Translations under genes and position numbers: made by a program
Assembly: GCA_963924565.1 (NCBI GenBank)
Contig: OZ004607.1
Coordinates: forward strand, 13,640,001 to 13,704,000
Direction of reading: 5' to 3'
Length of the DNA stretch: 64,000 bases
Source of the DNA: Ascidiella aspersa
Lineage: Eukaryota
Shown here: one piece after another, positions 46,301 through 52,300 of the stretch
How positions within the stretch are numbered: the stretch's first letter is position 1
Layout: each line of letters opens with the position of its first letter
The notes under the pieces: generated by a model
The model's database searches: none
What the model saw: the letters and a program-made list of their open reading frames with translations, nothing else
Told to the model about the DNA's origin: nothing

Positions 46301-49300
46301 GCAATGAAAAGCAGGTTTAGCTTATCTGCTTAAAAATACTAATTGAATAGTTATAGATTAAATCATATTATAAACTTTGTTCATTTTGACTTTATATATT
46401 GTTTTTAGGGAAAAGCATCTGAGGATTCTTCCAAACCAACCAAATCCAAGGTATTCACTAGTTCCAAAACTAAAGTATCTTCCAAATAAAAGTTTTAAAA
46501 TATATTTCCGGCTCTAAATAACTGAAATACTTGTATTGAGAAAATTATTATGCGTTTCAGGCATATCTTTTTGCTTTAAAATCTATATTTTATTTCAGAC
46601 AACAAGAAGTTTTGTTCTGCCTACCAAAAGTGCCAGATCATCACGCATCATAAAGGCAAACAGAAAGTATTTAAATGAAGACTCAAATTCATCTGGTATA
46701 ATGGACTTAAGGTAGGGATTACTAAATGGTTACACATGGCACCTTGGAATGTTATACAAAATTTTTAATAAGCCCTAATCTAGCTTTTTGAGCAGAAGAT
46801 GTTTATAAATTATATATACTGAAGATGATACAAGCTCGTATCGAAACGTCTTAATAATCAAGATGATGTTGATCTACTCGACTTTTTTTACTTTTGCAGT
46901 TCATAGTAAGATATACTCTTTTATTGAAAAAAATTTAATTTTGTTAGCCAATCGCCTGTCCCACCTGCATCGCCAGCACTACCATCCCCTTGTTCAGTAA
47001 AGCTGCCACCTTTCATGTTTGATCATCGCCAAGTTCAACTCGAAAATATGAAAGTCCGCAAAAAACTCGGCGAAAACTACACGGTGAGATATCTTCTGCC
47101 AAGCAATGGACAGCCTTAGCTCGTCCAATGAGTGACTACTTTTTATTGTTTGTTTTTACTCAGAAACAAAACAGCACAAAAAGAAGACCTCTAATCAAGG
47201 AGCCTACCTTCCAAGTTGGCGATCCTGTTCCGCGCGAGACAACGTTCCAGCGACGAAAAAATGGTATTTACAGGGAATATACAGTAGATTTTTTGTGACG
47301 CAATGATAAATCACTAGATTAATCCCAAAATATACTCGCTTACCAATTATGACGCCATTTCTGGACTTAAGTAATACAATATATTCTATTTTATGATTAT
47401 TATTCACTTGTTCAACAAAGAGAAGCTTTTTATAAATAAATCCCTAAATGTAAAGGATCTTTTTTGTTTTTTTGACAAACAATATTGTTGTGCGCTAAGG
47501 GCACTTAATTTTGACTGATTAATCTGAAAAAAGGGGCGACTATGTAGGTTTAAAGCACCCACAGATATTCAATGTTCAACTTGAGCAGGAACGATATGCG
47601 ACGTGTTGTGTGTGTTTTACTTTTTAGTGGCTCACGCGCGAGTGCAGCGACTCATCAAGCGAGCCAAGTTCAAACACTCCGAGGTCTCAATACAAGAAAA
47701 GAAGAAGCTTATTAAGGACGCCACCTTTACAGCGGTAGGTTGCGGAGTTTTATAGGTTGTAGTCAAAAAGTCGAAGCAGACAAAAGTTGCCCTGTCGCAC
47801 GATCAAACGAATCGAATAACCTGGACTCAAAAACAACTGTCGCTTGTAAGCGTTGTCATAAGTAATAAAACATGTCTAAATATTAACTCCCACGCTCCAC
47901 CGGTTGTTAATAAACTATTTTTGTTGTTAATAAACTATTTTTCACACATGTATAAGCACAGTGAGATAAGAAACGCCCAGAGACATACAAACGACTCTGT
48001 AAAACAAATTAATAAAATAAGTTGAATCTTGTTACACAGTTGTGTATTTTAAAATCCTAGTTTTAATCATAATTACGGAGAACAGTTTTAAATTTGTAAG
48101 CGTAACATTTTTGTGAAACATATATGAAAGTTTAACCATTCCACAAATTCAGACCTTTATTGTAAAGACACGAATCTAGCCAGGAAACTACATTATCTCC
48201 TTTCGAGTCCTTTGAAATGACAACACCTGTCCTGTTTGTCACCAGCCTCTATCGGAGAGCACCGCATCTGACGAGGCGTCAAATGCAAACTCTTCGCGAC
48301 GAAGGCGAATCTCGCCGCAAAAGGAAATCTCCGACTTCGGCTTAAGTACGACTGACTGGAATACCTTGACTCAAGTCCCGACAGTAAAGAACGACTCTAT
48401 CCCGGTTAGTGGTTCGCTCGTGAAATATTTTTTAGTTTTTAACTTTTTACTAATTTTGAGAAAATGTAGGGTCACTATTTTTTCCGGTTTTACAACAAGT
48501 TTGTTAAATACGGATACTTGATGGTGGTCCGTGTCGTAACGGCATACATTAACGGGTTGATATACATATTACATAACTACGGTTATGAATTGTCCTGACT
48601 TCATTAACTACGTTTGTGAACTGTCTTGGCGTAACATATACTACTTGAGCTTAAAACAAACTCTGTTTATCCAACAAGAAGACTGACATGCGGTTACACA
48701 ACGCATTTATGAAGGGCAATTCTTCGTGCTAATTTAAATTTTAAATTTTAATTTTTTATTTTATTATATTTTTTTATTTTTTTTTTGTGATTTTGATTTT
48801 TAATATTTCTGTCGGCCTGCTAAAACGTTGATTTTTCAGAAAATACATAACTTTTGCACATTACTACGGAAACTTTATAATAAATTATATCCTTCTGTTT
48901 TGTTTTTTTCCTTCCATTTGTACCACATTTACAGTGTCGTTGCGGGTGTTAAATGACTACAGTTATAAGGTGTCACTCATAAGGCTATAAACTTATCGAC
49001 CACGTAACGCACAACCTACACTGTATAAATCGCTAACAGACCTGGACACGACAAGAGGTACACAACGTGCTGCATGGCGCGCACACGTTCGGCGCCGCGT
49101 GGGGGAGCATTACGCGTCAGTACGACTTCCACGAGCAGCACCGGGACTGGTGGAGTGTACGTAACAAGGGCGTCAAGTGCAGGAACATGGGACTGCTCAG
49201 CGCCACGTTTAAGGTAGACGCTGCGATTGTCGTACGATTTTTATATGGTTTTACCGTTGATTCATTTTAATTAACCCACAATTGTTTTAGTGCGAGAAGA

Positions 49301-52300
49301 TTTGTATTACTTTGCTATTATACATGGTTGATATTGAACTGGAATTTGCATTGTGTTGGACAATCAGCGCTCACCGGACGAAAAACACTTACCAAAAATG
49401 TCGGCACGCCGTCTTCCAATTTACGTCATTATAAATTTTAATAACCAAACAAATAGTAAGCTAAAGGCCACCGTTTTGAGTAGGACTTTTTACACCATTT
49501 TATGCGTATAGTCAATTGATTGTTGTGGTTGCGCAAGCGTGTATAAGCGATACACAATAAAGACCGCACGTTATCTTATAACAACAATCAAGTTAAAAAG
49601 CAGCAGCAGCACTAACGCGAAGCGAATGCCCTTGCACTGGTCATAAACTCTTGGAGTTAACCATAACGCATTAACATAAATGTTGTTCTGTTGTTATCCC
49701 TTTCAGTTTTAAAACTATTTTTGATAAACGAATTAAATGTGAAAAGGTCCATTATGTCACCTAATTTTTGCTGTCATGTAATAATATAATGCAAAGGCAG
49801 GCGATAGAATTCCTCTGTTTGGAGCAGGGGTTCTTAAACTGGGGTCCATGAAACTAGTTATTTTTAAGTAATCAAATTTAAAGAAAATAGTTCAATTAAA
49901 AATATAACGGTTTTGCACTGAAGGTATTTAGACTCCATTTCACTTTTACGATTTTTGGACCGAAATCAGTAGATTTTAAAGTTTCTTGCCTACCGTGGAC
50001 CACGCGAAGCAAAATAAATCTTAAGGTTCCGCGGTAAAAAAAGTTAAAAACCCCTTGACTCTGGAGTTTTTCTTGTTTTTTGTCGCCTTAGCGAAAAACA
50101 AAAAGGCTCGTATCTACAGTCTGTAGTTGAACAGAACGCAAACCCTTCATCCAATCGCTTGCATTGTATTGCGCAGGTGAAGAGCTCGGTGCTGCTCCAG
50201 CTGAAGCCGAAGCTGAGCGACAACCCGAACGTGACCGTGTTCACCCCCAACGAACTGAGGCAACGCGGCCTCACCAGGAACGTGACATGCGACATGTCAG
50301 GGGGGGCCGTCGCTGACCAGGAGGGTACCGAAGTGGCCACAAGTGATGACGCAAGCAGACGGAATAAATTAGGTAAGGACGCGAGAGTGGCCGATCGTAA
50401 CTCGTCTGTGTAAAATTAGAGCTAGATTTAGGTCGTTTTGTGTTAAGTTTGTATACCAAGCATTAAATGGCACAGCGCTGCTATTTGGTAATGGTTAATG
50501 GAAAGACAATACATTTATGGTGACGCACATCTAGAATTAAACAGATAATCGTTTTTGCTTTTCATTAAAAAAAATTGTTTTGTTTTTTTCTAATCATTTA
50601 ACAATCTTGTTCACACCAGTCTGCTTTATCCTAATTAATACGTCCTCTAAATTCACTAAAAGTAATTATTTACCTTCTATAGAAGAACGCATTTCGACGT
50701 AATGTTTTCAACCCTTCATTTTGACGAAGTAATTTGCTGGCAATTCAATTCTATTGTGAGCTTAATCTTATCTGGCTTATTTTTACGTCCAAAATAATTA
50801 CCGCCTTGTCGAGCGTTTCTTTGTCCAATGTCCATACTTTGCTTTTAAAAAGTTATTTAAAATTAATTACGATTGGTAACTTTGTAGCGTCCCCTGGTGG
50901 CAAAAGCAGCAGTGTGGATGACGTGTACCTCGGTTTGTCGCAGAAATGTTTCGACTCCCTGACTCGATCCTGCAAGCCAAAGGTATTGTTTTAAGCCATA
51001 ATATAAAGTGTGAAGGCAATACAAATAATAATCGTTTTTGTTTTAAACGTATAAACAAAACCTATTCAGTCAATGTCTTGTTTAACGTTATTTTTGCTAA
51101 AACTGTATTTTTTACATGGCAAAGCGTTTTTAATTACGAACAAATTTTTTGCCTGTGTCATATTTCTACTTAAATCTCTTTGTGCAACTACTTCAAGTAC
51201 ATTTTCAATGAAAATGGATTAGAAATATTTTTTTAAATCTATCCTAGCGAATTCCCTTAGATATCTCTCGACAATAAAATTTTGTAAACATTTTAGAATT
51301 TGCAACCTAAGACCCCAGGTATGAATCATGCTAAGACTGTATTCCCAGAAAAACATACTAAACGGGATATGTCATACCAGTGTTGTAATGACTTAAGTCA
51401 GTGACTTTGACTTAAGTGTTTGACCATAATAACTTTTTGACTTAAGTATTTTTTGATGAATGACTTGACTTGAACTTAAGTCATTGTGTCAAATAACTAG
51501 TTTAATGAAGTGTTCTCATTAAATATTTGTAAATAAAATTGGGTTATTTATCTAAATGTTTGCACCAGAAACAATTTTCCGGCTGTATATGGTTGTTTTG
51601 TTATTTTCAGTTAAGTTATTGATCAAAATCGGAAGGGTTTACCAATTTGAATAGTTAAACGATTTATTTTTGATGTCAGAAGTTGACTTGTCCTAATAAT
51701 GACGTTACTGGGATTTAACTTTGGTAACTGATGACTTAGACTGGATCTTAATTATTATTTTTTTGCCAAAAACTTTAAAATGGCTTGTTTACAACACTGT
51801 GTCATACTCTTCTTCAACAAGCGCTTTATGTGCCTTTAGTGGAGCACCTGGGAGATCCACAGCTTGCTACACGGCGTCCACTCATTCGGGGTCGGTCAGT
51901 GGCCCAAAATCCTCCAGATGTATCGCTTCCGCAAGAGTCACGACTGCCTGGCCTTACGCGCCAAGTTCAAGTCGCTCAATAACCGGGGACTCGTGGTTGG
52001 TGGAGCGGTATGTCTTTTATATACAGTTATCAACATGAAAATGCAGTTTGATTGTTTTATTTAAACTTTTCAACTAGTGGAGTCATTCAGAAAGCTCGTT
52101 TAGGTTGGACGGGAACTTCATGCTGAGCTACTTTAAGCTGCTAACGACAAATAAAAAACTTTTGTACAACATTTTATTTTTAGTTTTGTGTTGCGAGGTA
52201 TGAATCATTTTTTGCACCGATTTCTGCATTACTGACGCACCGTTTAGTGTTACCTCTTTTTGCATTTAAAGCAAATTTAATTTGGTTAGTTTATTGAATC

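What the first reader, a model, noticed from the sequence alone, without database searches (positions are those of the whole stretch)
49040..52007. MLL/Trithorax protein with two in-frame TRF/telobox-like Myb domains
Seen: two phase 0-0 exons, in continuous frame between MLL landmarks (RVQRLIKRAK upstream, GPRIKHVCRRA downstream). They encode WTRQEVHNVLHGAHTFGAAWGSITRQYDF..RDWWSVRNK and KWSTWEIHSLLHGVHSFGVGQWPKILQMYRF..HDCLALRAKFKSL. Known: this matches helices 1-2 of the TRF1/TRF2/TERB1 Myb (W-x-x-E-E-x3-L-x2-GV-x2-YG-x-G-x-W-x-KIL-x2-Y-x-F); vertebrate KMT2A/B and Drosophila Trx have no such domain. The recognition helix differs from the telobox LKDRWR, so the target may not be TTAGGG. Inference: a lineage-specific H3K4 methyltransferase with its own DNA- or nucleosome-reading module, i.e. 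a different way of targeting Trithorax. I cannot confirm that it is undescribed.
Basis: partly seen in the sequence, partly recalled or inferred. Interest (0 to 1): 0.87.

Follow-up and report, generated by a model that had tools for sequence, protein, structure and literature searches.

The report
Sea-squirt MLL gene with two Myb domains
The only MLL/Trithorax-type histone methyltransferase gene of this sea-squirt genome carries two extra, conserved exons encoding telomere-factor-like (TRF-type) Myb DNA-binding domains, an architecture I could not find described or annotated, which could give the enzyme its own way of finding DNA.

Summary
Exons A (49040-49213) and D (51840-52007) are AG/GT-bounded, phase 0-0, and lie in one unbroken frame with eight neighbouring exons. 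That frame runs from the RVQRLIKRAK exon to the GPRIKHVCRR exon and on to CXXC and PHD. FYRN, SET and post-SET follow 10-26 kb past the window, so this is the genome's only KMT2A/B-type gene.

Both domains are homologous to TRF1/TRF2/TERB1-type Myb domains over all three helices. Evidence is PDB profile E 1.8e-5, hhalign 96-98%, an AlphaFold model at pLDDT 89, and Foldseek top 14 all TRF/TERB1 Myb. Neither reaches Pfam's cut-off.

A-type and D-type exons recur in a few unnamed assemblies with the same splice positions, so the duplication is old and both copies are kept. One such fragment holds the MLL landmark exon and Myb exon A about 90 codons apart.

Stranded RNA reads cover exons D-H at about 3-7x but A-C at only 0.2-0.7x, and no splice joints were listed. 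Inclusion of A-C may therefore be alternative.

No protein over 1022 aa among 1.84 billion representatives carries the domain, and no paper was found. DNA binding is inferred, not shown.

Verdict: new variant of a known kind, moderate interest.

The parts
47628..47734 (+). Exon U1, an MLL landmark exon (RVQRLIKRAKFKH...), phase 1-0
   Evidence: AG/GT and frame. Its motif recurs next to a Myb exon in another species' fragment, P0001 (E 5e-6).
48246..48404 (+). Exon U2, a linker exon before Myb 1, phase 0-0
   Evidence: AG/GT and frame. No Pfam hit. Similarity to exon C is not significant (p 0.13).
49040..49213 (+). Exon A: Myb-like domain 1 (A-type), phase 0-0, basic (pI 9.8), helix 3 degenerate (VRNKGV)
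   Evidence: hhalign against telobox-type Mybs gives 96.2%, E 2e-9. Orthologues are P0001, P0003/P0086 and P0008 (48-55% identity). No Pfam hit on its own.
50177..50372 (+). Exon B, follows Myb 1. It starts VKSSVLLQLKPKL; the rest is a variable linker. Phase 0-1.
   Evidence: Weak similarity to the start of exon E (p 0.02). Another individual shows two non-synonymous differences in its 3' half (places 50306 and 50322).
50888..50982 (+). Exon C, a linker exon before Myb 2. It ends in the basic ...CKPK just before the domain. Phase 1-0.
   Evidence: RNA depth is almost nil.
51840..52007 (+). Exon D: Myb-like domain 2 (D-type), phase 0-0, basic (pI 10.5), helix 3 LRAKFK
   Evidence: Pfam Myb_DNA-binding E 3.4e-4, 21.1 bits, below the 24.4 cut-off. 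TRF1 Myb E 0.0024. hhalign 97.7%, E 2e-12. AlphaFold pLDDT 89.3 with three helices. Foldseek top 14 are TRF1/TRF2/Terfa/TERB1 Myb, TM 0.8-0.9. Orthologues are P0009 and P0042. RNA depth about 6-7x, strand-specific.
52847..52958 (+). Exon E, follows Myb 2. It starts VRSDIIPNLRPVL, a conserved extension of the module. Phase 0-1.
   Evidence: Similar to the stretch after the D-type exon in P0042 (p 0.009), and P0009 and P0042 share that stretch. RNA-covered.
53680..53787 (+). Exon F with an AT-hook-like motif (KQRGRPKSK), phase 1-1
   Evidence: RNA-covered. Calling it an AT hook is my reading of the motif.
54101..54226 (+). Exon G, phase 1-1
   Evidence: RNA-covered.
54625..54892 (+). Exon H, the pre-CXXC MLL landmark (..GKGPRIKHVCRR), phase 1-2
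   Evidence: RNA-covered at about 4x.
57459..57733 (+). Open frame holding the first CXXC exon (six Cys: CGKCEAC..CGECDGC). The donor is after 57733; the acceptor was not mapped.
   Evidence: Pfam zf-CXXC E 0.0013, below cut-off. Sequence.
58485..58627 (+). Second CXXC exon (..SPKCLRRNSC..). The loop lacks KFGG and KQ. Its 3' end is uncertain (donor at 58576 or 58628).
60544..60843 (+). Open frame holding the first PHD finger exon
   Evidence: Pfam PHD E 6.9e-5, 23.2 bits, just under the 24 cut-off.

Best explanation
This is the single KMT2A/B (MLL1/2, Trithorax) orthologue of an ascidian genome. In this lineage its N-terminal half has gained two TRF/TERB1-type Myb helix-turn-helix domains. 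They sit between the conserved RVQRLIKRAK motif and the pre-CXXC GPRIKHVCRR motif.

Each domain is one phase 0-0 exon, followed by a short conserved 'V.S..L.P.L' exon. The pair arose by an old tandem duplication of a ~2.7-kb multi-exon unit, and both copies have been kept in several species.

The most likely mechanism is inferred, not shown. The basic Myb domains act as a built-in double-stranded-DNA reader that helps tether the H3K4 methyltransferase to chromatin. Domain D is the main candidate: its recognition helix is LRAKFK and it has a basic KPK arm. Two Mybs in one chain would mimic the two Mybs of a TRF dimer. They lie next to an AT-hook-like motif and a CXXC finger that keeps its zinc ligands but has lost the KFGG/KQ CpG-contact loop.

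The target motif is unknown. It may be TTAGGG-like or changed, because the Asp of the telobox is Ala in D and Asn in A. Domain A has a degenerate helix 3 and may be auxiliary. Its exon block A-C may be alternatively included.
For: Gene identity:
- CXXC and PHD lie in the window.
- FYRN and SET lie on the same strand 9.8 and 25.4 kb downstream. Only one other FYRN gene exists in the genome.
- A canonical post-SET stop is present.

Exons:
- Ten AG/GT exons keep one frame.
- RNA reads lie only on bins that hold exons or intronic repeats, and over the exons only in the orientation expected for + strand RNA. D-H are covered at about 3-7x.

Conservation:
- The A-type group has 48-55% identity and the D-type group 35-46%. 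Each keeps the acceptor after a Q (CAG) codon and a V (GTN) codon right after the domain.
- P0001 carries the U1-like motif (E 5e-6) and the A-like exon (E 6e-22) about 90 codons apart.
- None of the 12 differences between another individual (X2) and the window on the 695-nt contig around exon A falls in exon A.

Fold and family:
- A profile built only from MLL-type sequences hits TRF1 Myb over 62 residues (E 1.8e-5), TERB1 (4e-4) and TRF2 (3e-3).
- hhalign gives 96.2% and 97.7%.
- The AlphaFold model has pLDDT 89 and three helices.
- The Foldseek top 14 are all TRF/TERB1 Mybs, rmsd 0.6-1.6 A apart from the TERB1 NMR model at 3.9 A.
- ESM features point to Myb clusters.

DNA binding is plausible:
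- All seven domains are basic, pI 9.5-11.5.
- D keeps K421R, R423K, W424F and R425K relative to human TRF1, using the alignment. Residue numbering and contact roles are from my memory of the TRF1-DNA structures.

Duplication: the spacings U2-C, A-D and B-E are 2642, 2800 and 2670 nt.
Against: - No splice-junction read was listed, so physical linkage of the Myb exons to MLL exons in mRNA is not shown.
- Depth on A, B and C is 0.2-0.7x against 3-7x on D-H. Many transcripts in that sample may therefore lack the first Myb block.
- Neither exon reaches Pfam's gathering score, and A has no Pfam hit at all.
- Helix 3 of A has Gly at the core aromatic position and Val at the Arg425 position.
- The Foldseek E-values are only 0.02-0.2 because the domain is short, and the AlphaFold alignment contained TRF-like rows, which biases the model.
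- No DNA-binding or chromatin data exist.
- No annotated ascidian MLL protein carried the domain, although Clavelina and Phallusia proteins are in the library searched. Either the feature is restricted to a subclade or gene models skip these exons.
Confidence: 0.6

Rival explanations
1. The Myb exons, at least the A-B-C block, are alternative cassette exons. The main MLL mRNA carries one Myb (D) or none, and the two-Myb protein is a minor or tissue-specific isoform.
For: RNA depth on A-C is 0.2-0.7x against 3-7x on D-H within 600 nt of mRNA. My rough Poisson estimate is P about 0.01. A+B+C is 465 nt, or 155 codons, lying between phase-0 boundaries, so skipping it keeps the frame. A and D are each phase 0-0.
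Against: Only about 6% of one run was read and the counts are a handful of fragments. A-type exons are conserved across species with intact splice positions. Some reads do lie on A, B and C. This reading is compatible with the main explanation rather than opposed to it.
Confidence: 0.3
2. The domains are SANT-like protein- or nucleosome-binding modules (histone tails, linker DNA without sequence preference, or a partner protein), not sequence-specific DNA readers.
For: - Partial hits to the RSC8 SANT and CHD1 HTH domains.
- The telobox Asp is lost in both domains, and helix 3 of A is degenerate.
- Invariant surface histidines (H7, H11, H34 in D numbering) replace the K, S and R of TRFs, which suggests a new interaction surface.
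- From my own knowledge, the Myb of TERB1, one of the nearest solved relatives, is reported to bind DNA weakly.
Against: All copies are strongly basic, pI 9.5-11.5, unlike histone-tail-binding SANT domains, which are typically acidic (established knowledge). Full-length matches are to DNA-binding TRF Mybs, while the SANT matches cover helices 1-2 only.
Confidence: 0.3
3. The Myb exons belong to a separate nested gene, or are decaying relics not translated as part of MLL.
For: No junction reads were seen. No annotated long protein carries the domain.
Against: - One unbroken frame runs across ten AG/GT exons.
- No start codon opens either exon, and there are no stops.
- RNA is strand-matched, with D at the same order of depth as MLL exons E-H.
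- In P0001 the MLL motif exon and the Myb exon are 90 codons apart.
- Conservation stops exactly at the splice sites in six fragments.
Confidence: 0.06

Closest known systems
Myb domains of TRF1/TRF2 (human; zebrafish Terfa) and of TERB1
   Same: Same three-helix fold and the same sequence pattern: W..E...L..G...[FY]G.G.W..I...Y.F, then helix 3 and a C-terminal GL[LIV]. These are the best matches by sequence profile and by fold. The domains are basic. Two Mybs act per functional unit, as in a TRF dimer.
   Different: There is no TRFH dimerisation domain; the two Mybs sit in one chain inside a methyltransferase. The telobox LKDKWR becomes LRAKFK in D and VRNKGV in A. Conserved histidines lie on helix 1. 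Scores are below Pfam's cut-off. The genome's own canonical TRF-like Myb is a different gene on another chromosome.
Human KMT2A/KMT2B and Drosophila Trithorax
   Same: Shared features are the pre-CXXC motif, an eight-Cys CXXC finger, PHD fingers, FYRN, SET and post-SET, and an AT-hook-like motif.
   Different: From established domain tables (my knowledge), those proteins have no Myb/SANT domain. In human MLL1 the two landmark motifs are only a few tens of residues apart. Here about 650 codons in eight exons, including two Mybs, lie between them. The CXXC loop lacks KFGG and KQ.
Plant TRB proteins (telobox-binding Myb that recruits PRC2 and the H3K4 demethylase JMJ14)
   Same: A telomere-repeat-type Myb domain is used to bring a histone-methylation activity to gene-proximal sites (PMC11287191; bioRxiv 10.1101/2023.01.10.523456, listed).
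   Different: There is no evidence yet for a telobox target.
Mammalian MLL at telomeres
   Same: MLL is reported to bind telomeres and regulate TERRA transcription (abstract of PMC10046226), so a functional link between MLL and TTAGGG chromatin already exists.
   Different: Mammalian MLL has no Myb domain, so that association must use other parts of the protein or partners (my inference). The ascidian protein could bind such repeats directly, but this is untested.
EZH2 SANT domains
   Same: Another SET-domain histone methyltransferase carrying two Myb/SANT-like three-helix domains (my knowledge).
   Different: Those are SANT-type, not telobox-type. They sit in a different enzyme family (H3K27) and are ancient and universal rather than lineage-specific.

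Membership tests
TRF/telobox-type Myb domain (HTH myb-type; Pfam PF00249) | Significant sequence-profile similarity to TRF Myb domains over all three helices | tested here: met
   A profile of MLL-type sequences only hits TRF1 at E 1.8e-5 over 62 residues, TERB1 at 4e-4 and TRF2 at 3e-3. hhalign gives A-type 96.2% (E 2e-9) and D-type 97.7% (E 2e-12).
TRF/telobox-type Myb domain (HTH myb-type; Pfam PF00249) | Reaches Pfam's curated gathering score | tested here: not met
   D scores 21.1 bits against a cut-off of 24.4 (E 3.4e-4). A has no hit at E <= 10.
TRF/telobox-type Myb domain (HTH myb-type; Pfam PF00249) | Three-helix bundle with helix-turn-helix geometry | tested here: met
   The AlphaFold model of D has pLDDT 89.3 with helices 3-16, 21-27 and 36-48. 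Foldseek gives TM 0.80-0.92 to TRF1/TRF2 Mybs. Caveat: the input alignment contained TRF-like rows. The model without an alignment had the same three helices at pLDDT 63. Exon A was not modelled.
TRF/telobox-type Myb domain (HTH myb-type; Pfam PF00249) | Telobox signature in helix 3 (L-K-D-[KR]-W-R) | tested here: not met
   D has L-R-A-K-F-K: the basic and aromatic character is kept but Asp is lost. A has V-R-N-K-G-V.
TRF/telobox-type Myb domain (HTH myb-type; Pfam PF00249) | Binds double-stranded TTAGGG repeats | not testable with these tools
   Only indirect evidence: pI 9.5-11.5.
KMT2A/B (MLL1/2, Trithorax) histone H3K4 methyltransferases | C-terminal SET and post-SET | tested here: met
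   SET at C1:13729439-13729627, 41.6 bits, over the cut-off. The open frame ends ..CNCGARTCRKFMN then a stop.
KMT2A/B (MLL1/2, Trithorax) histone H3K4 methyltransferases | FYRN/FYRC module | tested here: met
   FYRN at C1:13713772-13713927, 31.8 bits, over the cut-off. There is only one other FYRN locus in the genome. FYRC was not searched separately.
KMT2A/B (MLL1/2, Trithorax) histone H3K4 methyltransferases | PHD finger cluster | tested here: inconclusive
   The first PHD exon scores E 6.9e-5, 23.2 bits, against a cut-off of 24. Further Cys/His-rich open frames follow in L006, but they were not scanned.
KMT2A/B (MLL1/2, Trithorax) histone H3K4 methyltransferases | CXXC finger with the KFGG / KQ CpG-contact loop (separates KMT2A/B from KMT2C/D) | tested here: inconclusive
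   Eight Cys are present in CXXC spacing, with Pfam E 0.0013 below cut-off. The loop reads R-SQSAENQPATSPVLSPK-C without KFGG or KQ.
SANT domain (histone-tail-binding subtype) | Acidic or neutral surface and no basic recognition helix | tested here: not met
   Net charge is +2 to +7 and pI 9.5-11.5 in all seven copies.

The most novel reading that the evidence does not exclude
In these ascidians the Myb pair has taken over DNA targeting of Trithorax from a CXXC finger that can no longer read CpG. On this reading, MLL is recruited by direct reading of a telomere-like (TTAGGG-type or derived) motif. Such motifs are, according to unchecked first-stage notes on this genome, carried by small transposons clustered at the 5' ends of housekeeping genes. 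That would be a hard-wired, sequence-directed H3K4 methylation system in an animal, mirroring in the activating direction the plant telobox-TRB system. It could also link MLL directly to telomeres and TERRA.
Probability: 0.1. Interest if true: 0.85.

Novelty: new variant of a known kind. Interest (0 to 1): 0.55.

Why it matters
How Trithorax/MLL enzymes find their targets is a long-standing question. Flies use response elements and partner proteins; vertebrates use CXXC-CpG reading, PHD fingers and menin/LEDGF.

An MLL orthologue that has fused two telomere-factor-type DNA-binding domains into its own chain, while its CXXC loop has decayed, is a natural experiment in re-wiring that targeting. 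It is directly testable in a chordate lineage with good embryology, by in-vitro binding, CUT&RUN and exon deletion.

It also bears on the evolution of TRF-type Myb domains in tunicates, where a 2021 survey could not find TRF orthologues (PMC8653790).

The limits are that the feature seems confined to a few ascidian genomes and that function is so far only inferred.

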